IMG/VR virus record: IMGVR_UViG_3300048927_000250
Location: 62,001 to 126,000 of that record
Length of the DNA stretch: 64,000 nucleotides
Reading direction: 5' to 3' (one strand)
Shown here in pieces: positions 7,356 to 59,183 of the stretch (the first letter of the stretch is position 1; every line of letters begins with the position of its first letter). The position numbers and the translations under genes were made by a program. The notes beneath the pieces are model-generated. The model was not told the DNA's origin and did not search any database. It saw only the letters and a program-made list of their open reading frames with translations.

Positions 7356-7396
7356 TCTGTGTAACTCCTGTGATACAAGTAGCTGAAGTCAATTCT

Positions 7397-7407
7397 ATAA
7401 TATAGAC
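7397..7407 (-). promoter_or_regulatory. Early-type promoter motif GTCTATATTAT
   Basis: Intergenic; matches 19681-19691 and 20622-20632; phiKZ early promoters carry TATTAC. Confidence 0.55.
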
Positions 7408-49255: not shown

Positions 49256-51418
49256 TTAGTTGCTCAGGCGAACCAGGTATTCGCTCAGGCTTGGGTCGTA
49301 CCAGCTAACGAAGATTTCCATGTCCACACCGTCAGCCAGCAAGATACGGCGGCGGATAGCGAACAGTTCTTCTGCGATACCTTCGTGTTGACGCATCCCG
49401 TTAATGGCTTTAAACAGCAACGGAGAGGCTTCTTTGGTTACACGAGCGACACGCGTTGGCTTCCCGTTAGCACGCGGAGCCATCAGACCCAGTTCCATGG
49501 TAGAGAAGCTGGTCAGGATGGTGTCGAAACGTTCACGGTGATACACGCCACGATTAACTGCAACGTTGTCTTCACCGGCCGCAAACTCGATGCAGTGGAA
49601 CTGACGCATCAATTCACGGGCGAACTTGTTCAGACGTTCCACGGTTTGCACACCGAAGTCTTCTTTCAGGCGACCGAGGAATTCCACACCGTCAACGCCG
49701 AAGTCGTCAATCCAGCATGGCAGACCCAGGTTACCTTGCAGTGCACGGTTAACCGCAGCTGTGAACAGACGGTTGATGCCCACCCACAATGCCGGAGCAA
49801 TGGTCCCTTTCAGGTCCATCAGACGTTTGTGGTACTCCTGGTAGCTGTGGCCGTCGTGCCATTTGCTGGAGGTGAAGTCAATCAGCTGAAGCTTCAGGTC
49901 TTCGAACTCCGCATCGGTACGCGCAACGTACAGCAGTTCCATTTCGTTGGTGATACCCTGAATGGTAATTGGGTCAGAGTCTTCCGCCATGACGGTGTTC
50001 TCTGTTGCCAGCTGCCACATTTTCACCGTGAGGTCTTTCTTGCCCATGCCATAGACCGTGCCGTTTAACAGGACGGTATCCCCATTACGGGACGGCAGCT
50101 CCGGAGCGAAGGTCGGCATTGGTTCGCGTTCTTCTTCCGGCAGTTGCCCGTTGGCTTCTTCCCATTCCTTCATTTCGCGCTCGTGTTCCTTGCGCTGATG
50201 TTCTTCGTCTGCTTCGATATCGTTCAGACGGAAACGGGAAGTAGAAGCTACTTTGGTCAGCTGTGCACGAATCTGCGCAACTTCGTTCTCGTAGCTCTGT
50301 GGGCGACCTAAGTCAGGAATCACCGCATCATCGTAGTTCATGTCGACCTCAGTATACACGACATCCTGATAGCCATCTTCCGTCACCACTAAGCGCATAC
50401 GCACTACAGTCGGGTCGTACAGGACTGGCAGGTTTGGTTTGTTCGGGTCCAAAGGCTTACGCGGAAGCGTAGCAATGAATTCCGGGTTTTCGATGTCTGC
50501 ACCCAGCTCAATCAACTGTGCACGGGTCGGGCGGTCAGTCTTCGCCAACACTTTAGCTGGGTCCAGCGTTGCAGCATCACGAACAGGTTGTCCCATACGA
50601 CTTGGGCCGTTGTGGACAAACTTCACGGCTTCCGGTTCGCGGGCTGCGGCAGGTGCTACATTAACAACAGCTGGCTCTGGGAAATCCGGCACCGGTTGAG
50701 AGGCAGCCGGTTTTTCCTGAGTGATGCCACCACCTGCCAACTTCGCACGCATCTGTGCCAGTGCATCCTGGTTTTTATCCAGAACAGTGTTACCGGTAGA
50801 GCGTGGACGCTCTTCAGCGCGGCTGTAACGGTCAGAGACACGAGAAGGTTGTGCAGGTGCTCGGTCTTCTGGTAATGGACGGTCACGTAAGCGAGAACGC
50901 AATTCTTCACGTTCTTCACCACCGCGGGAAGAACGACGGGCGCTGCGGTCGTAATCACGACCACTGCTACGGTCACGTTCCTGACCACCACCAAAGCGGT
51001 CGCTTGGACGACCACGTTCGTCACGGTCATCGCGGTCACGACCGCGTCCACGGCCACCTCGACCACCACGGGCGTCTGAGAGCACGTCTTGCAGGTCTTC
51101 GGCTTTCTTGACGAACTTACGTGCGTCATCGTAGTCGCGGTCGTTCAGGTCGTCAGACAGACGTTTGTCCTTCAACACGAAGTCGGCGGCTTTCATGAAG
51201 ACCAGACCGGCGAGATGACGACTGTAGTCAAACTGACGGTCGTCGGACAGGTATTCCAGCGCATCAATTACCCACTTCATCAGCGAGTCAAATTCACGGT
51301 TAGTGAACTTGTCGATGCTCACTTCTTCGAAATACATTTCGATAACCATTGAACGGTCTTTCTTCAGAACATCAATCACGTCCAATTCGATATCACGGTC
51401 ACTTGGCAAACGGCTCAT
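49256..51418 (-). CDS. phiKZ-like protein with a long RGG/RD-rich disordered linker (720 aa)
   Basis: Directly downstream of the nvRNAP subunit; residues ~115-200 are R/G/D/S-rich. Confidence 0.85.
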   Translation of the reverse strand: MSRLPSDRDIELDVIDVLKKDRSMVIEMYFEEVSIDKFTNREFDSLMKWVIDALEYLSDDRQFDYSRHLAGLVFMKAADFVLKDKRLSDDLNDRDYDDARKFVKKAEDLQDVLSDARGGRGGRGRGRDRDDRDERGRPSDRFGGGQERDRSSGRDYDRSARRSSRGGEEREELRSRLRDRPLPEDRAPAQPSRVSDRYSRAEERPRSTGNTVLDKNQDALAQMRAKLAGGGITQEKPAASQPVPDFPEPAVVNVAPAAAREPEAVKFVHNGPSRMGQPVRDAATLDPAKVLAKTDRPTRAQLIELGADIENPEFIATLPRKPLDPNKPNLPVLYDPTVVRMRLVVTEDGYQDVVYTEVDMNYDDAVIPDLGRPQSYENEVAQIRAQLTKVASTSRFRLNDIEADEEHQRKEHEREMKEWEEANGQLPEEEREPMPTFAPELPSRNGDTVLLNGTVYGMGKKDLTVKMWQLATENTVMAEDSDPITIQGITNEMELLYVARTDAEFEDLKLQLIDFTSSKWHDGHSYQEYHKRLMDLKGTIAPALWVGINRLFTAAVNRALQGNLGLPCWIDDFGVDGVEFLGRLKEDFGVQTVERLNKFARELMRQFHCIEFAAGEDNVAVNRGVYHRERFDTILTSFSTMELGLMAPRANGKPTRVARVTKEASPLLFKAINGMRQHEGIAEELFAIRRRILLADGVDMEIFVSWYDPSLSEYLVRLSN

Positions 51419-54160: not shown

Positions 54161-54269
54161 AATTTATCGCCCTGCGGGATAAACGCCGTTTGTTCCAAAT
54201 CGCTGATGAGCAGAAGTTCCTAAAGTTCTGTCTAACATCCCCGTTCCATTAACGGAATCGTTCAAGTAG

Positions 54270-54280
54270 GTAATATATTC
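54270..54280 (-). promoter_or_regulatory. Early promoter motif GAATATATTAC
   Basis: TATATTAC core downstream of the MCP terminator, upstream of the nvRNAP operon. Confidence 0.65.
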
Positions 54281-54304
54281 TTGAAAGTTCTTTACATCGA
54301 CCGA

Positions 54305-54351
54305 AAACAAAAAAAAGAAAATAAAGCCCGGGAGCCCCGAAGGGCTCCCGG
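54305..54351 (-). terminator. Strong MCP terminator
   Basis: CCGGGAGCCC-TTCG-GGGCTCCCGG followed by GCTTTATTTTCTTTTTTTT. Confidence 0.9.
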
Positions 54352-54366
54352 TACTTCAACTACGGC

Positions 54367-54474
54367 ACTCTACACTGTCGCCGGAGGGTCTCGCCAACGA
54401 ACCCTCGGTGGGGCGTATCACGGTTTAGTGAAACCGTTCAACTGTGGGTTGACGATAGCCTGGCTGAGTGGAGT
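54367..54474. ncRNA. Candidate multi-hairpin RNA element in the MCP 3' UTR
   Basis: Hairpins 54384-54406, 54420-54437, 54438-54452; closing stems 54367-73/54468-74 and 54375-79/54454-58 (G.U-dependent, plus strand). Confidence 0.4.
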
Positions 54475-56775
54475 TCAAGGAGCTGGAGTAGCATCAGTGG
54501 TGGTGATGTCGCCAGATACCTTAGCAATAGTGCTGTAGGTAGTACGTTCTGCGATTGCAGCTTCCAGGTTCAGCACGTCGATGACAATCATCAGCGGCAG
54601 GAAGTGGAAGTGACGGTAGCGAGGCGTCAGACGGATTTCGTTCGCGATACGCTGTTCACGAATCATCGCGAAGTTAACGATGTACTCTGGAATCATGCCC
54701 AGGATGCCGTGGTCCAGCGGATGAATTTCGCTTTCACGTGGCAGGGTGAAGGTCATGATGACTTTGTCTTTCATACGCAGGTCAGAGATTGACGCTACGG
54801 TGAAGTCGAAGCCAATACCAGTGGTACGGTCGTCGCCCTGAATCATCAGGTAGTTCGGCAGACGTTTGTCAGTACCGATTGCAACGTGCGGTTTCGGGTT
54901 AGAGCCCGGGAACGCAGTTTCCAGCGCCGCAGAGTAACCGGTTTTCAGGTCAGCACGGTAGATAGCTTCCTGAATCACGGATACGAACAGACCCTGGATG
55001 TCTTCCACGCGGCCAGCAGAGTTGGTGCTGTTCAGTTCTGCCTGAACGTCCAGCTTGATGCGGCGGAAGTACGGACGAACGTAGTACTGACCCAGACCTT
55101 CCAGACCCGGCTGAGATTCCAGCGGATGTGCAGTGTCCTGGCCCAGGTAACGTTCCAGGGTGTCAACGCGGTTCAGCAGGGTGGTAACACCCGCGTTACG
55201 CAGTTGCAGACGGTATGCGTTTTGCAGCGCTTCCATACGCGGATAGACTTTTTCGTCGTCAGTCAGCGCAGGTTTCATGATGCACAGCGGGCTCAGAGTT
55301 GGAATCATGAAGCCGTGTTTCATCACGTCGGAGTCAATCAGCAGACCACGTTCCAGCTGGTTGATGTTGGTCAGGCGGCTTTCCAGGCTGTAACCAGCCG
55401 GAGAGAACGTGATACCAGCAATCAGCGGAGCCAGAGTTGCGTCGGACAGAGCCACTTCCTGACCCTGGGCGTTGAACGCTTTCGCGATGCGCAGTTCAGG
55501 TGCACGAGTGTCACCGTTACCGCTTTCAACGTTCATCTCACCGTCAACCTTGATGCTCAGGTGGATGGTGTAGCCAGCATCTTGCAGCGGCTTCAGGATA
55601 GCAGAAGCAGCTTTAGAGTGCAGCTTGGTGTCCGGGGTAATCGGCAGGCTGTCGTTGTGGAACTTAACAGTGGTCTGACGGAAGTTCATTTCGCGGGTAG
55701 CCAGGTACTGCGCGAAGTTAGAACGGTTCACGTCGAAGTCAACTGCTTCGTTCACGCCACCTTTGCTGACTTTAACAATCAGCTCACCCAGCGCGATACG
55801 GCTGTCCAGTGAATCGGTGTGGTTCGGCGTACCCTTCTGCATACGAGAAGGAGTCTGCGCCAGGTTGATGAGACTGAAGCTACCAGCGTTGAACGCCAGG
55901 TAGTTAGTCTGGAACTCTTCACCAGACTGCTCAACAGTGGTCGGAGCAACCAGAGTTGGGTCGATGAAGTATTTGTCGTTTTTGCCGGTTTGCAGGCACG
56001 GAATCAGGTCGGTAGTATCCGTTTCCAGGATTTCGTGGTTCAGCAGACCTTCCAGGATGTTACGCTTCTGGAAGTCACCAGCATCGCCAGACTGGTCAGG
56101 AGCTTTCCAACCGTCCCAGACTACGTTACGACGCACGGTCATGATGAAGCCCGCGTTGTCCGGAGTCAGGATTTGGGTTTTGTAGAACAGCTCGTTGAAC
56201 TCGTGCTGTTTCGCCGCCGTCATCGCGATGGAGTAAGAGTGCTGACGCCATTCGTCAGTTACTTTCTCATCGAATGATTCCATTGCTGGAAGTGCGCGCG
56301 AAGGAACAACAGGAATCGCACCAGCCGGACCAGAAGTAATCTGCTCGTGGCGGATTACGTCGTCAGCTTTAAAGCCAGCACCGGTTTCACCGATGTTGCT
56401 GTAGTAGCCGCCAACGTTGTTGTGACCTTGCAGCAGCACAGCGGCCGCTTCAGTGGCAACACGCTTCTGGGCAGCACGGATGTGCGGTACGGCGAAACCG
56501 TACGCTGCACCGCCCTGGGTGTCAGCTTCAGAAGCCAGCGCGAACGCAGACTCGGTTGCTACACGCTGAACTTCACCGAAAGCGGTGTCGTAGCTGTGTT
56601 GGAATGCATCGCGGTCGATACCGAAATCGCTGAAGGATTCAACGGCCACGGCCACCGCACCCGCCTGCTGCTTGTTCGGCAGGACGTTCAAGGTGTCATT
56701 TACCACTGAACCCAGTTTTTCGAAAAGGTCGCGGTAACCAGAGTTGCCCGCGGCTTTGGATTTGACAATAGCCAT
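54475..56775 (-). CDS. Major capsid protein (766 aa; start moved to MAIVKS; phiKZ gp120-like)
   Basis: Extreme codon bias, propeptide with AVE/ATE/ASE/AME protease-site motifs, flanked by the gp119-like gene and DnaB. Confidence 0.9.
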   Translation of the reverse strand: MAIVKSKAAGNSGYRDLFEKLGSVVNDTLNVLPNKQQAGAVAVAVESFSDFGIDRDAFQHSYDTAFGEVQRVATESAFALASEADTQGGAAYGFAVPHIRAAQKRVATEAAAVLLQGHNNVGGYYSNIGETGAGFKADDVIRHEQITSGPAGAIPVVPSRALPAMESFDEKVTDEWRQHSYSIAMTAAKQHEFNELFYKTQILTPDNAGFIMTVRRNVVWDGWKAPDQSGDAGDFQKRNILEGLLNHEILETDTTDLIPCLQTGKNDKYFIDPTLVAPTTVEQSGEEFQTNYLAFNAGSFSLINLAQTPSRMQKGTPNHTDSLDSRIALGELIVKVSKGGVNEAVDFDVNRSNFAQYLATREMNFRQTTVKFHNDSLPITPDTKLHSKAASAILKPLQDAGYTIHLSIKVDGEMNVESGNGDTRAPELRIAKAFNAQGQEVALSDATLAPLIAGITFSPAGYSLESRLTNINQLERGLLIDSDVMKHGFMIPTLSPLCIMKPALTDDEKVYPRMEALQNAYRLQLRNAGVTTLLNRVDTLERYLGQDTAHPLESQPGLEGLGQYYVRPYFRRIKLDVQAELNSTNSAGRVEDIQGLFVSVIQEAIYRADLKTGYSAALETAFPGSNPKPHVAIGTDKRLPNYLMIQGDDRTTGIGFDFTVASISDLRMKDKVIMTFTLPRESEIHPLDHGILGMIPEYIVNFAMIREQRIANEIRLTPRYRHFHFLPLMIVIDVLNLEAAIAERTTYSTIAKVSGDITTTDATPAP

Positions 56776-56787
56776 TCTTCTCTTTCC

Positions 56788-56867
56788 TTCAACGTTGAAA
56801 GGTTTTGGTGTCAAGTACTTGACGAGTGATATTATCACATACCATAATAGGCGCTAGTACTAGCGCC
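56788..56867. promoter_or_regulatory. MCP promoter region: tandem TATG motifs and four palindromes
   Basis: TATGGTATGTG at 56846-56836; palindromes 56788-99, 56810-23, 56826-38, 56850-67. Confidence 0.65.
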
Positions 56868-57435
56868 CGCTCACGGCGTGACGGAGATAGCGTCTGAAAA
56901 CCTCAAGTTCTTTGAACTCGGGGAATTCCGCAATCCCACTTAACGATTCGATAACGGCATTGTAAAATGCACGGTCATCTTGGTACACCGGTGTAGTGCT
57001 CCCTATAAGAAGCAGGGTATTCGCGTCGACACGCACCGGTGTGTAAAACTCGGCATCGAGCGGATTGGTTTCTAACACACCAATAGCAGAATCTCCACCG
57101 GTCACTTCTTTCAGCTTCGCGTCGCGGTACAATTTCTCCTTCAACGCTTCAATTGCTTTCTCGTGCTCGAGGTAGAACGCTGCGTTTTCATCGCAGTCTG
57201 CTATGGTATGGAAGTCGGAAAAAACTTTATCTGTCAGACGATGGAGGTCGCGTTGGACGAGCGTGTAAATAAATACTTCGTCCAGTGTTACTATAGACGC
57301 TTGACCTTCACACGCCACCAATTTGGGAAAAGACAGCACGTCGAGGTACGTACAGTTTTTGGTTTCGCTAATTGCTGATGCGAGCCAAGACGGCACAATA
57401 CCTACGCGGAGCTGCTTGAGCAACTTGTTTCGCAT
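56860..57435 (-). CDS. Structural/assembly protein (191 aa; start moved to MRNKLL; phiKZ gp119-like position)
   Basis: GGAG RBS before ATG 57435; between DnaB and MCP. Confidence 0.75.
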   Translation of the reverse strand: MRNKLLKQLRVGIVPSWLASAISETKNCTYLDVLSFPKLVACEGQASIVTLDEVFIYTLVQRDLHRLTDKVFSDFHTIADCDENAAFYLEHEKAIEALKEKLYRDAKLKEVTGGDSAIGVLETNPLDAEFYTPVRVDANTLLLIGSTTPVYQDDRAFYNAVIESLSGIAEFPEFKELEVFRRYLRHAVSGR

Positions 57436-57459
57436 ACGGGTCTCCAGATGGGATTTCTG

Positions 57460-57470
57460 CACATATCATA
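57460..57470 (-). promoter_or_regulatory. Late promoter, tandem TATG (TATGATATGTG)
   Basis: Same TATG-N-TATGTG arrangement as at the MCP promoter. Confidence 0.6.
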
Positions 57471-57483
57471 AAACTGTCGGGGT

Positions 57484-59052
57484 ATGGGGATGAATTACAA
57501 ACTCGTCATCATTAACACACTATTATTGCTTTATTGGGAACAACAGCTGGACAATGGTGCAGACAACGCTACTCTGGTCAAGAACATTCTCAAAGAAATA
57601 CGTCCAGAACGCGGGATGGCTGACACCGACCCGAGTTACCCTTCTTTACAAGGCCTGCAAGTTATCATCGCTAAACAGGTCCTGAATTACGGTAACAAGA
57701 TTTCAAGGGAGTTCTTGGTATCACAAGTCAGAATGGTTTGCGCGGACGATACGAGCACCCGTGACCTGGTTCTTGATTCCATCGAACAGGAATTGGACCA
57801 GACGGGCGTTCGTAACTATTGCCTATCTCTCGTTCGTGAGCTGAAAACGTACCAACGTAAACAAGCCTTCCAGAAACAACTGAACGAATTGGGCGGGAAA
57901 ATCCTGTACGGCCAGGAAGAATACGACCTGACCACCAAAGCTCGTGAGTTGGTTTCTGCCTTTGAACGCTTTACTGAACAGGAAGGTGAAGACCTTCGTT
58001 CTATCCACGGAGTGAGCGAGTTCCTCGACTTCAATGACGAAGAGCTGCTGCGTAAATACTTCAAGGACAGTAAAGAGTCCGTCAGTCCCGATGAAATCAT
58101 CAAGTTCCCGATTCAGGCCGTTAACCGTCTGTTTGGGGCACAAGGCGGCGGTCGCCGTAAAGAGATGATTATGATTGGCGGTTTGCAGCACCACTTTAAA
58201 TCCGGTCTGGCAATGTTGATGACCCGTGGTGCGGCAATGTACAACAAACCGAAACTACGCGACCCGGCGAAGAAACCGGCAATCGTCATGCTGTCCACTG
58301 AGAACCAGCTGATGATTAACCTGCGCACCATGTACAAGCAAATCATGGAACCGCTGGTTGGTAAGAAGATTCGTTTCAACGAAATCGACCCTGCCGAAGC
58401 CGCAAGCTTCATGAAAGAGAAGTTCATGGAAAACGGTTGGCACTTCCTGATGGCGCAAGTCGACCCCGAGTACTTCGGTTACGACGAACTGCAACAGACG
58501 GTGCTGAAACTGGAAGCGATGGGTTACGAGATTATCGTACTGACCGTCGACTACCTCGGAATGTGTTCGACCAAAGGGTTGACTCACAGTGGCATCACCG
58601 GACGTGACAAACAAGCTTTGTACAACCGCAGCCGTAACCTGATGCTTCGTCACGACTATCTTATGATAACGCCTCACCAGTTATCAACCGAAGCCCTGGC
58701 GATTCACCGTGACCGACCGAAGAACTTCTTAAACGAGGTTCTGAACTGTGCGTACTACCACGACTGTAAGACGCTTGCGCAGGAAGTGGACATGGAAATC
58801 AACTTGCAGAAGTTGGTTCTCGAAGGAAAGACGTATTTGAACATCGGACGCGGTAAACACCGTGGTGTGGATGACACGCCATTGGATGACCAGCGTGCAA
58901 CCTTGCTGTTTGGTGACTTCGGTATTCCGGATGACATCAATGGCCAAGACCAGAGCATGAAACGCCCTGGTGACGGCATGGCAAGTGAAGGTGGTGCAGT
59001 CGCCTGGCATAATGGCGCACTGGACGACATGGGTGGGTACTCCATCAATTAA
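57484..59052 (+). CDS. dnaB: DnaB-like replicative helicase (phiKZ gp118-like)
   Basis: Degenerate Walker A GGLQHHFKSG, STEN, VDYLG, TPHQLS, GKHRG motifs. Confidence 0.88.
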   Translation: MGMNYKLVIINTLLLLYWEQQLDNGADNATLVKNILKEIRPERGMADTDPSYPSLQGLQVIIAKQVLNYGNKISREFLVSQVRMVCADDTSTRDLVLDSIEQELDQTGVRNYCLSLVRELKTYQRKQAFQKQLNELGGKILYGQEEYDLTTKARELVSAFERFTEQEGEDLRSIHGVSEFLDFNDEELLRKYFKDSKESVSPDEIIKFPIQAVNRLFGAQGGGRRKEMIMIGGLQHHFKSGLAMLMTRGAAMYNKPKLRDPAKKPAIVMLSTENQLMINLRTMYKQIMEPLVGKKIRFNEIDPAEAASFMKEKFMENGWHFLMAQVDPEYFGYDELQQTVLKLEAMGYEIIVLTVDYLGMCSTKGLTHSGITGRDKQALYNRSRNLMLRHDYLMITPHQLSTEALAIHRDRPKNFLNEVLNCAYYHDCKTLAQEVDMEINLQKLVLEGKTYLNIGRGKHRGVDDTPLDDQRATLLFGDFGIPDDINGQDQSMKRPGDGMASEGGAVAWHNGALDDMGGYSIN

Positions 59053-59126
59053 TCGGTACCGTAAAGCAAAAGCTTACGACCAGCCAACCTCAACCAACCG
59101 ACAACCGACTTCTTAGACTCGCGGTG

Positions 59127-59183
59127 GCATAAATGCCAGACTGGACTGGGTATCGTCCCAGTCCAGTCCCGCGGGCTTTATGC
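59127..59183. terminator. Symmetric bidirectional terminator, GCATAAA...hairpin...TTTATGC
   Basis: 12-bp stem GACTGGACTGGG/CCCAGTCCAGTC with a TTTATGC tail on each strand. Confidence 0.85.

What the first reader, a model, noticed from the sequence alone, without database searches (positions are those of the whole stretch)
56788..56867. Four palindromes packed into 80 bp around the major capsid promoter
Seen: GGCGCTAGTACTAGCGCC (18 bp, perfect), GTGATA-T-TATCAC (13), GTCAAGTACTTGAC (14, perfect), TTCAACGTTGAA (12, perfect). Two share an AGTACT core. They bracket tandem TATG motifs: one upstream, three in the 5' leader. A rough random model (4^-9 per position for the 18-mer, 4^-7 for the 14-mer) makes this clustering very unlikely. 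Inference: an operator array for a dimeric regulator, extruded DNA hairpins helping the phage RNAP open a late promoter, or leader hairpins with self-complementary GUAC/ACGU loops able to kiss-dimerise or autoregulate capsid translation.
Basis: partly seen in the sequence, partly recalled or inferred. Interest (0 to 1): 0.6.

Follow-up and report, generated by a model that had tools for sequence, protein, structure and literature searches.

The report
Palindromic leader of jumbo-phage capsid gene
Four short perfect palindromes really do crowd the late promoter and leader of the major capsid gene of a PhiEaH1-like nucleus-forming jumbo phage. The one beside the ribosome-binding site is a capsid-gene-specific element kept, with changing sequence, across that whole phage family, which points to an undescribed control of capsid expression.

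Summary
The window is an Erwinia phage PhiEaH1-like genome (phiKZ-like). It holds 25 palindromes of this size, as chance predicts, but four lie in 56788-56867. No simulation reached that clustering, and it is the only such cluster in the 215-kb genome.

All features read on the minus strand:
- H0 (56850-56867) is a strong hairpin over the stop codon of the upstream gene.
- Two tandem TATG motifs follow, matching the phiKZ-type late promoter.
- H1 starts exactly at the predicted +1 (56838).
- H2 lies mid-leader.
- H3 abuts the Shine-Dalgarno of the capsid gene, whose true start is ATG 56775.

Relatives keep this layout while the sequences change. A perfect palindrome of at least 10 bp lies within 45 nt of the capsid start in 33 of 73 distinct leaders, against 8 of 191 other gene starts. 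Most have a CG centre, and the phiKZ version occurs once in its genome.

Best reading (about 0.5): a structured capsid mRNA leader whose RBS-anchored hairpin pairs an anti-SD with the SD and tunes translation or stability.

One point stays unexplained: symmetry runs through the nominal loop (9 of 14 elements against 1 of 31 controls), which a plain hairpin does not need. No transcript data could be obtained.

The parts
56860..57462 (-). Upstream gene, 200 aa. It sits where phiKZ gene 119 sits in the conserved gene order. Its stop codon TAG is 56862-56860.
   Evidence: ORF list. phrog_31665, E 6e-119. The order helicase / ~190-aa gene / capsid / RNAP subunit recurs in Moabite, PCH45, SPLA10, KpLz-2_45 and phiKZ.
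56850..56867 (-). H0: 18-bp perfect palindrome. As RNA it is an 8-bp GC-rich stem with a GUAC loop (-13.2 kcal/mol). It overlaps the upstream stop codon and lies at -12 to -29 from the predicted +1.
   Evidence: Kin with 66-68% capsid identity have a different hairpin at the same place, and in one the loop is not palindromic. It is not a canonical intrinsic terminator by the scan. It resembles the genome-wide unit of a hairpin followed by TTATG.
56843..56846 (-). Distal TATG motif (predicted late promoter, +1 at 56843).
   Evidence: Sequence. The tandem TATG pair is invariant in L010 and L025. Consensus from PMC4666361.
56838..56841 (-). Proximal TATG motif (predicted late promoter, +1 = G at 56838).
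   Evidence: GTATGT and TATGTA are 8-11 times enriched upstream of genes in this genome. Relatives carry TATG followed by T or A 60-90 nt before the capsid ATG.
56826..56838 (-). H1: 13-nt palindrome, a 5-bp stem with a 3-nt loop (-3.1 kcal/mol) that begins exactly at the predicted +1.
   Evidence: In L010 and L025 one A-to-G change turns the loop-closing U-A into U.G, so the DNA symmetry is broken but RNA pairing is kept.
56810..56823 (-). H2: 14-bp perfect palindrome in mid-leader (5-bp stem, GUAC loop, -4.0 kcal/mol).
   Evidence: L025 has a different 14-bp perfect palindrome at the same place, and L010 has that one with a single G.U.
56786..56801 (-). H3: RBS-proximal hairpin. Its core is the 12-bp perfect palindrome 56788-56799 with an ACGU centre, extended by U.G and C-G pairs so that a CUUU stretch pairs with the GAAGG of the ribosome-binding region (-4.5 kcal/mol).
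   Evidence: Family-wide conservation is shown.
56780..56790 (-). Purine-rich Shine-Dalgarno region (GAAGGAAAGAG). Its 5' part forms the 3' arm of H3.
   Evidence: Sequence. The same AAGGAA block about 11-14 nt before the ATG is found in relatives.
54475..56775 (-). Major capsid (head) protein gene, 766 aa, starting at ATG 56775-56773.
   Evidence: phrog_3231, E 9e-223. Homologues align from residue 1-5. vB_Ea277G is annotated from this ATG.
54328..54351 (-). Canonical terminator after the capsid gene (10-bp GC stem, UUCG loop, T-rich tail). Listed for contrast with H0-H3.

Best explanation
The 80 bp are the junction between the upstream gene and the capsid gene of a phiKZ-like phage. H0 is a strong hairpin closing the upstream gene. 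It is followed by two tandem TATG late promoters for the phage's non-virion RNA polymerase. The resulting leader of about 63 nt folds into three small stem-loops. H1 starts at +1, so the mRNA would have no single-stranded 5' end, which is the layout of known 5' stabiliser hairpins. H2 is a spacer hairpin. H3 is the functional core: a hairpin anchored to the ribosome-binding site, with an anti-SD stretch in its 5' arm, part of the SD in its 3' arm, and a WCGW apex. I infer that H3 acts on the RNA to set how, or when, ribosomes or a factor reach the capsid RBS, and that H1 and H2 protect the very abundant late transcript. Shown: positions, statistics, conservation, capsid specificity. Inferred: the transcription start, RNA-level action, and the direction of the effect.
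For: The clustering is real. The TATG motif is conserved, enriched upstream of genes, and known as the late promoter with G as +1 in phiKZ. The layout is kept while sequences turn over in kin with 66-68% capsid identity. A perfect palindrome of at least 10 bp lies within 45 nt of the capsid ATG in 33 of 73 distinct leaders against 8 of 191 other starts in the same loci, and in 17 of 29 clusters at 60% identity. An exact 4-nt anti-SD lies within 24 nt upstream of the SD in 39 of 73 leaders against 17 of 160 controls. The element sits 1-24 nt (median 10) from the ATG but 11-140 nt from the nearest TATG, so it is tied to the RBS. Arm length varies from 4 to about 10 pairs while the SD/anti-SD base and the CG apex stay, as expected of a hairpin rather than a protein site with fixed spacing. 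One large clade keeps a stem here through compensatory changes with non-palindromic loops. The phiKZ 10-mer is unique in its 280-kb genome. Related phages show several promoters, and 3' ends just downstream of them, in the capsid leader (PMC11512511; PMC10914365).
Against: The leader hairpins are weak (-3.1, -4.0 and -4.5 kcal/mol), and the whole leader is not unusually stable (z -1.5, 14 of 200 shuffles fold as well). Predicted SD pairing in MFE folds is no more common than in control genes (50 of 72 against 111 of 191). A plain hairpin does not need a self-complementary loop, yet 9 of 14 distinct capsid elements have one against 1 of 31 controls. A systematic count of internal mismatches shows no G.U excess (3 G.U, 8 A.C); the G.U cases in sister lineages are post hoc. 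No transcript ends could be read, so the +1 is only predicted. No experiment exists on this phage.
Confidence: 0.5

Rival explanations
1. The palindromes act as DNA or nascent-RNA structure on the phage non-virion RNA polymerase. They would be downstream promoter determinants that help melting, escape or start-site choice, or pause/attenuation sites just after the promoters that time capsid expression.
For: In phiKZ the +1 to +51 part of the late promoter P119L is needed for about 30-fold of in vitro transcription, without any conserved sequence (PMC4666361; PMC12809450). H1 begins exactly at +1, and H0 lies at -12 to -29. In 201phi2-1 two termination sites lie immediately downstream of capsid promoters. 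In the PhiEaH1 supergroup the distance from the proximal TATG to H3 is a constant 37-41 nt. Perfect symmetry suits DNA hairpins, which tolerate very small loops (established knowledge).
Against: Family-wide, the conserved element tracks the ATG and not the TATG (11-140 nt), and it incorporates the SD. Most other predicted TATG promoters in this genome have no hairpin at +1. H1-H3 are far weaker than this genome's real terminators and have no T tail.
Confidence: 0.15
2. One or more palindromes are operators on double-stranded DNA for a dimeric phage or host regulator that controls the capsid gene specifically.
For: Dyad symmetry runs through the centre and is specific to capsid leaders. The CG centre is nearly invariant (20 of 22). 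The element occurs as a single copy per genome. The same 12-mer as H3 is found in two Erwinia-type lineages with only 30-41% capsid identity.
Against: The four palindromes have four unrelated half-sites. Arms vary in length and sequence, so the distance between the conserved outer parts is not fixed. H2 is replaced by a different perfect palindrome in kin with 66% identity. The outer arms being SD and anti-SD has no rationale for a DNA site. No candidate regulator was identified.
Confidence: 0.12
3. The self-complementary elements let capsid mRNAs pair with each other, by loop-loop contact through the CG centre and then an extended duplex. This would couple translation, stability or location of the most abundant late mRNA to its own concentration.
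For: Symmetry through the loop is selected. ACGT and TCGA centres replaced each other in two separate groups without intermediates. The predicted homodimer is 16 kcal/mol better than two monomers, against 7.3 +/- 2.9 for shuffles. Palindromic stem-loops and CG-containing tetraloops are known dimer linkages in retroviral RNAs (PMC516450).
Against: Four-nucleotide loops are poor kissing partners. The energy gain is a trivial property of any palindrome. Several clades manage with non-palindromic loops. There is no experimental hint in any phage.
Confidence: 0.1
4. The cluster is a by-product with no function of its own: chance, overlapping sigma-70-like hexamers, or restriction-site-like words.
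For: A sigma-70-like match (10 of 12) lies on the plus strand at 56819-56848 and uses parts of H2 and H1. The centres are 4- to 6-bp restriction-type words.
Against: None of 200 simulations reaches the clustering. Palindromy is kept in relatives while the sequence, including the sigma-70-like hexamers, changes. This genome otherwise purges many palindromic words, so retention here argues for selection.
Confidence: 0.03

Closest known systems
phiKZ-type late promoter of the non-virion RNA polymerase (TATG, G = +1; P119L)
   Same: There is a TATG directly before the predicted start, in tandem copies. It is upstream of a late structural gene, in the same gene neighbourhood as phiKZ genes 118-123.
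   Different: The start site is not mapped in this phage. Here the promoter sits directly before the capsid gene, between a strong hairpin and a hairpin that starts at +1.
Capsid-gene leaders of 201phi2-1 and phiKZ mapped by ONT-cappable-seq (several consecutive promoters; 3' ends right after promoters; 5'UTR-derived small RNAs)
   Same: The window has tandem promoters and small hairpins inside the capsid leader. The RBS-proximal palindrome is present in both of those phages.
   Different: In the text read here (abstract, outline and keyword passages of PMC11512511 and PMC10914365; their supplements are not held), those papers do not describe the RBS-anchored palindrome or its family-wide conservation. 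Whether their termination sites coincide with it could not be checked.
5'-terminal stabiliser stem-loops (E. coli ompA leader, T7 gene 10 leader); from established knowledge, not tested here
   Same: A hairpin sits at the very 5' end of a very abundant mRNA, as H1 would if +1 is 56838.
   Different: H1 is short and weak (-3.1 kcal/mol) and perfectly symmetric. Most other predicted late leaders in this genome lack such a hairpin.
SD-sequestering hairpins and translational operators (fourU-type thermometers, RNA-phage coat protein operator); from established knowledge
   Same: A pyrimidine anti-SD pairs with the SD in a small hairpin next to the start codon. The element is specific to one gene.
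   Different: No ligand, protein or temperature dependence is known. The hairpin is symmetric through its loop with a conserved CG centre, which those systems do not require.
Retroviral dimer linkage elements (palindromic stem-loops, GACG tetraloops; PMC516450)
   Same: Self-complementary apical sequences with a CG dinucleotide sit on short stems in a leader.
   Different: Those act on genomic RNA for packaging. Their loops are usually six or more nucleotides. Dimerisation of a phage mRNA has not been reported in what I searched.
Phage N4 virion RNA polymerase hairpin promoters; from established knowledge
   Same: Small DNA hairpins lie near a phage polymerase start site.
   Different: N4 hairpins lie upstream at a fixed distance, with conserved loop and stem features. 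Here three of the four palindromes are downstream, and the conserved one follows the RBS.

Membership tests
phiKZ-type late (non-virion RNAP) promoter | TATG motif immediately at the start site, upstream of a late gene | tested here: met
   Two TATG motifs at 56846-56843 and 56841-56838. They are invariant in L010 and L025 and present in all relatives. The related 6-mers are 8-11 times enriched upstream of genes.
phiKZ-type late (non-virion RNAP) promoter | Transcription starts at the G of TATG | not testable with these tools
   RNA-library contigs span the region in 13-33 kb pieces, and the raw-read runs lack the phage.
phiKZ-type late (non-virion RNAP) promoter | The genome encodes the multisubunit phage RNA polymerase | tested here: met
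   A 'polymerase' gene lies two genes downstream of the capsid gene in PhiEaH1, as for phiKZ gene 123. This rests on annotation and gene order only.
Intrinsic (rho-independent) terminator | GC-rich stem-loop followed by a T-rich tail | tested here: not met
   H0 has the stem (-13.2 kcal/mol), but its tail fails the T-run criterion and it was not called. In L010 and L025 the equivalent hairpin is followed by an A run. H1-H3 are AT-rich, weak and have no tail.
This genome's own terminator class | Stem of 7-14 bp that is GC-rich, with a GNRA or UUCG-type tetraloop, often followed by TTATG | tested here: inconclusive
   H0 shares the GC stem and a following TTATG, but it has a GUAC loop. H1-H3 share none of these features.
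5'-terminal mRNA stabiliser hairpin | Stem-loop within 0-2 nt of the 5' end of the transcript | tested here: inconclusive
   Met only if +1 is 56838 (predicted). With the distal start there is a 5-nt overhang.
SD-sequestering translational hairpin | SD bases paired with an upstream complementary stretch in a local hairpin | tested here: met
   In the window, a CUUUCA stretch pairs with UGAAGG. An exact anti-SD is present in 39 of 73 capsid leaders against 17 of 160 controls. MFE-based pairing alone does not discriminate.
SD-sequestering translational hairpin | Opening of the hairpin is regulated (temperature, protein, ribosome, processing) | not testable with these tools
   Needs reporter or structure-probing experiments.
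Operator array of one dimeric DNA-binding regulator | Repeated sites that share a half-site and a fixed spacing | tested here: not met
   The four half-sites are unrelated, and arm length and sequence vary among relatives.
Kissing-loop / palindromic dimer linkage | Self-complementary apical sequence | tested here: met
   GUAC, GUAC and ACGU centres in the window. A self-complementary centre is found in 9 of 14 distinct capsid elements against 1 of 31 controls.
Kissing-loop / palindromic dimer linkage | RNA actually dimerises | not testable with these tools
   There is only a thermodynamic prediction, which holds for any palindrome.
Any curated RNA family (Rfam 15) | Covariance-model match | tested here: not met
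   Only one chance-level hit to an unrelated family (E 1.4, 13 bits against a gathering score of 42).

The most novel reading that the evidence does not exclude
The RBS-proximal palindrome is a capsid-gene-specific element, conserved across nucleus-forming jumbo phages, whose two-fold symmetry is itself the functional feature. Either a dimeric factor reads a WCGW-centred palindrome at the capsid RBS, or capsid mRNAs pair with one another through it. Either way, capsid synthesis would be switched by factor level or by mRNA concentration rather than by a simple hairpin.
Probability: 0.2. Interest if true: 0.75.

Novelty: new variant of a known kind. Interest (0 to 1): 0.55.

Why it matters
How nucleus-forming jumbo phages time and scale capsid production is unknown. 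Their late promoter is only four bases long. Published work shows that unknown downstream sequences matter about 30-fold, and their mRNAs must leave the phage nucleus before translation. A cis-element that is unique to the capsid leader, tied to the ribosome-binding site and kept across the family gives a concrete handle for these questions. It is small enough to test with a handful of reporter constructs in phiKZ, PhiPA3, Goslar or PhiEaH1. It may also help phage engineering (capsid expression cassettes) and annotation, since it marks the true capsid start codon.

Tried and rejected
- Reads: the one run search found four metatranscriptome runs holding the phage, but their contigs span the region in 13-33 kb pieces, and the two raw-read RNA runs I tried held no phage reads. 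So there is no information on starts or ends.
- Sense versus antisense folding energy as a test for RNA-level selection: not discriminating (10 of 24).
- G.U versus A.C mismatches as a strand test: the systematic count shows no G.U excess (3 against 8). The G.U cases seen in sister lineages are post hoc.
- 'SD paired in the MFE fold': no different from control genes.
- Whole-leader stability: z only -1.5.
- Rfam: nothing.
- Near-identical strains (PhiEaH1, vB_Ea277G): the region is identical, which is uninformative.
- Supplementary tables of the two cappable-seq papers are not held, so the published termination sites could not be compared with the palindromes. The original phiKZ promoter-mapping paper is not in the library.
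- The pair counts come from an alignment centred on the palindromes by construction. They show diversity of pair types, not independent proof of pairing.
- Canonical terminator for H0, and a sigma-70 promoter, were considered and rejected.
- An operator array of one regulator was rejected (unrelated half-sites).

Full report
**What the window is.** The 2 kb around the finding is 99.3% identical to Erwinia phages PhiEaH1 and vB_Ea277G (genus Iapetusvirus). The window is positions 62001-126000 of a 215-kb virus record. The local genes are on the minus strand:
- a 200-aa gene (57462-56860, phrog_31665);
- the major head protein (phrog_3231, E 9e-223);
- a hypothetical gene;
- a phage RNA-polymerase subunit.

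A DnaB-like helicase is transcribed divergently. The same gene order is found in Serratia phages Moabite and PCH45, Salmonella phage SPLA10, Klebsiella phage KpLz-2_45 and phiKZ genes 118-123. So this is a phiKZ-like, nucleus-forming type of jumbo phage.

The capsid protein of relatives aligns from residue 1-5 of the ORF that starts at ATG 56775. That ATG has a purine-rich Shine-Dalgarno, whereas the GTG at 56838 used in the RefSeq record has none. The 63 nt between them are therefore leader, not coding sequence.

**The observation.** All four palindromes are present as described. The window as a whole has no excess of such palindromes: 25 observed against 31.7 +/- 5.9 simulated. Four within 80 bp was never reached in 200 simulated windows. 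The 215-kb genome has 99 against about 105 expected, and no other cluster. The genome otherwise purges palindromic words. GATC is absent altogether, eight 6-bp palindromes are absent, and CTAG is at 0.06 of expectation. That makes retention of four palindromes in one leader more notable.

**Anatomy on the transcribed strand.**
- H0 (56867-56850) is a GC-rich 8-bp stem with a GUAC loop (-13.2 kcal/mol). It contains the stop codon of the upstream gene.
- Two TATG motifs follow, 5 nt apart.
- In phiKZ, TATG is the late-promoter consensus of the non-virion RNA polymerase and its G is the start site. [quoted passage not shown]
- If the same holds here, the proximal start is G 56838, which is also the first base of H1 (5-bp stem, 3-nt loop, -3.1 kcal/mol).
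- H2 (5-bp stem, GUAC loop, -4.0) follows after 2 nt.
- H3 follows after 8 nt. Its core is the 12-bp palindrome, extended by a U.G and a C-G pair, so that a CUUU stretch pairs with the first bases of the ribosome-binding region (-4.5). The ATG lies 12 nt after the core.

GTATGT and TATGTA are 8-11 times enriched upstream of genes in this genome, and about 29 candidate TATG promoters can be listed. Only a few of them have a hairpin at +1.

**How these hairpins differ from the genome's ordinary ones.** Intergenic hairpins in this genome are mostly 7-14-bp GC-rich stems with GNRA- or UUCG-type tetraloops; 35 have a 4-nt spacer. An example is the terminator after the capsid gene at 54351-54328. 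Many are followed by TTATG: 28 of 204 flanks, against a 1.4% background. This matches the published phiKZ terminator motif, a stem-loop followed by TTAT. H0 plus its following TTATG resembles that unit but fails the T-tail criterion. H1-H3 are a different kind: short, AT-richer, weak and symmetric through the centre.

**Close relatives.** Two metagenomic relatives with 66-68% capsid identity (L010, L025) keep the tandem TATG block and H1-H3 positions.
- H1 differs by one A-to-G change, giving a U.G pair.
- H2 is replaced in L025 by a different 14-bp perfect palindrome. L010 carries that one with a single G.U.
- H3 keeps a 10-bp core.
- At the H0 position both have a different hairpin, one with a non-palindromic loop, followed by an A run. 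That argues against H0 being a simple intrinsic terminator.

**Distant relatives.** In Moabite, the Klebsiella group, PCH45/SPLA10 and further metagenomic loci (41-56% identity), a perfect 12-16-bp palindrome again abuts the SD, with different arms and an ACGT or TCGA centre. phiKZ itself has a perfect 12-bp palindrome made of anti-SD, ACGT and SD seven bases before the capsid ATG. Its 10-bp core occurs only there in the 280-kb genome. Goslar, RSL2, a Vibrio phage, Eowyn and an Erwinia phage with only 30% capsid identity also have one, and the last carries the very same 12-mer as the window.

I then collected 80 more capsid loci from IMG/VR. Over 73 distinct leaders:
- 33 have a perfect palindrome of at least 10 bp within 45 nt of the ATG, against 8 of 191 other gene starts in the same loci.
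- This holds in 27 of 54, 17 of 29 and 12 of 13 clusters at 80, 60 and 45% identity.
- Centres are ACGT (17), TCGA (11) and three other self-complementary tetramers (5).
- An exact anti-SD lies within 24 nt of the SD in 39 of 73 leaders against 17 of 160 controls.
- The element ends 1-24 nt (median 10) before the ATG but lies 11-140 nt from the nearest TATG.
- In one large clade the same position holds a stem that changes by compensatory substitutions but has non-palindromic loops.

The lineages are related, so the P values overstate independence. The cluster counts are the safer statement.

**RNA or DNA?** Evidence for an RNA hairpin:
- the tie to the RBS;
- SD and anti-SD as the outer arms;
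- variable stem length with a constant base and apex;
- bulges and internal loops in the extended stems;
- the clade with ordinary loops;
- several sister-lineage changes that give G.U.

Evidence against a plain hairpin:
- The structures are weak and the leader as a whole is not unusually stable.
- MFE-predicted SD pairing is not more frequent than in controls.
- A systematic mismatch count shows no G.U excess.
- The nominal tetraloop is self-complementary in 9 of 14 distinct capsid elements against 1 of 31 control hairpins.
- ACGT and TCGA centres have replaced each other in two separate groups without visible intermediates.

So two-fold symmetry is itself under selection in many lineages. 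Something reads, or benefits from, that symmetry. It could be a dimeric factor, a DNA-level structure during transcription, or pairing between mRNAs. The last is thermodynamically favoured, as for any palindrome, and has precedent in retroviral leaders. I cannot decide among these with sequence alone.

**Relation to published work.** Cappable-seq of 201phi2-1 found three consecutive promoters before the capsid gene and two termination sites immediately downstream of two of them. Three promoters were reported for phiKZ, along with many 3' ends inside 5' leaders. The text I read from those papers (abstract, outline and keyword passages) does not describe the RBS-anchored palindrome. Full-text searches for the motifs returned no phage paper, and Rfam has no match. 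The ChmC RNA-binding protein of these phages binds near start codons without a defined motif. It is a possible reader, but nothing links it to this element.

**Verdict.** The finding is real and non-random, and it marks a conserved, capsid-specific cis-element. The most likely function is control of capsid mRNA translation or stability by a structured leader behind tandem late promoters (confidence about 0.5). The rivals remain open: action on the phage polymerase, a DNA operator, and mRNA self-pairing. The selected symmetry through the loop is unexplained.

Noticed in passing
window 56775-56838 (minus strand): The RefSeq PhiEaH1 record starts the major head protein at GTG 56838 (787 aa). That G is the predicted transcription start. 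The real start is almost certainly ATG 56775 (766 aa), as annotated in vB_Ea277G and as homologues align.
   Followed up: yes
whole genome G000:C1 (215,418 bp), including the window: GATC is completely absent on both strands (about 1,560 expected). Eight 6-bp palindromes (among them ATCGAT, CTGCAG, GCATGC and GGCGCC) are absent, and CTAG is at 0.06 of expectation. Yet H0 contains two CTAG. This is strong avoidance of restriction-type sites.
   Followed up: partly
genome-wide; in the window e.g. 54328-54351, 49961-49988, 54163-54183: Terminator-type hairpins (GC stems with GNRA or UUCG loops) are very often followed by TTATG, usually TTATGC: 28 of 204 flanks against a 1.4% background. This may be a combined stop/restart unit, or simply the tail of the terminator, as in the published phiKZ terminator motif.
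   Followed up: partly
window 56819-56848, plus strand: There is a sigma-70-like promoter match (TTGACG, 18 nt, CATAAT; 10 of 12) antisense to the capsid leader. It is built from parts of H2 and H1 and is not conserved in L010 or L025.
   Followed up: partly
G000:C1:182080-182092 (outside the window), minus strand: A second case of GTATGT followed at +3 by a 13-nt palindrome lies upstream of a 323-aa gene. A few other predicted late leaders also start with a hairpin, but most do not.
   Followed up: partly
L038:630-651 (Erwinia phage pEa_SNUABM_54) and L029:990-1011: The 12-mer core of H3 is identical in two lineages whose capsid proteins are only 30% and 41% identical to the window's. This suggests sequence-level constraint, convergence in one host, or exchange of the leader.
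   Followed up: partly
runs X2, X3 on window 54200-58200: Libraries labelled metatranscriptomic RNA-Seq hold the phage in contigs of 13-33 kb (longest record 110-175 kb) with only 8 differences. This looks more like phage DNA in the library than like transcripts. A root metagenome may be the source of the window.
   Followed up: no
window 59125-59168: Two adjacent hairpins (a 14-nt near-palindrome and a 12-bp stem with a 6-nt loop) lie between the convergent helicase gene and the next gene. This is likely a bidirectional terminator.
   Followed up: no
window 7394-7406: A 13-nt AT-rich palindrome (TCTATAATATAGA) lies between divergent genes, with no TATG nearby. It may belong to another promoter class.
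   Followed up: no
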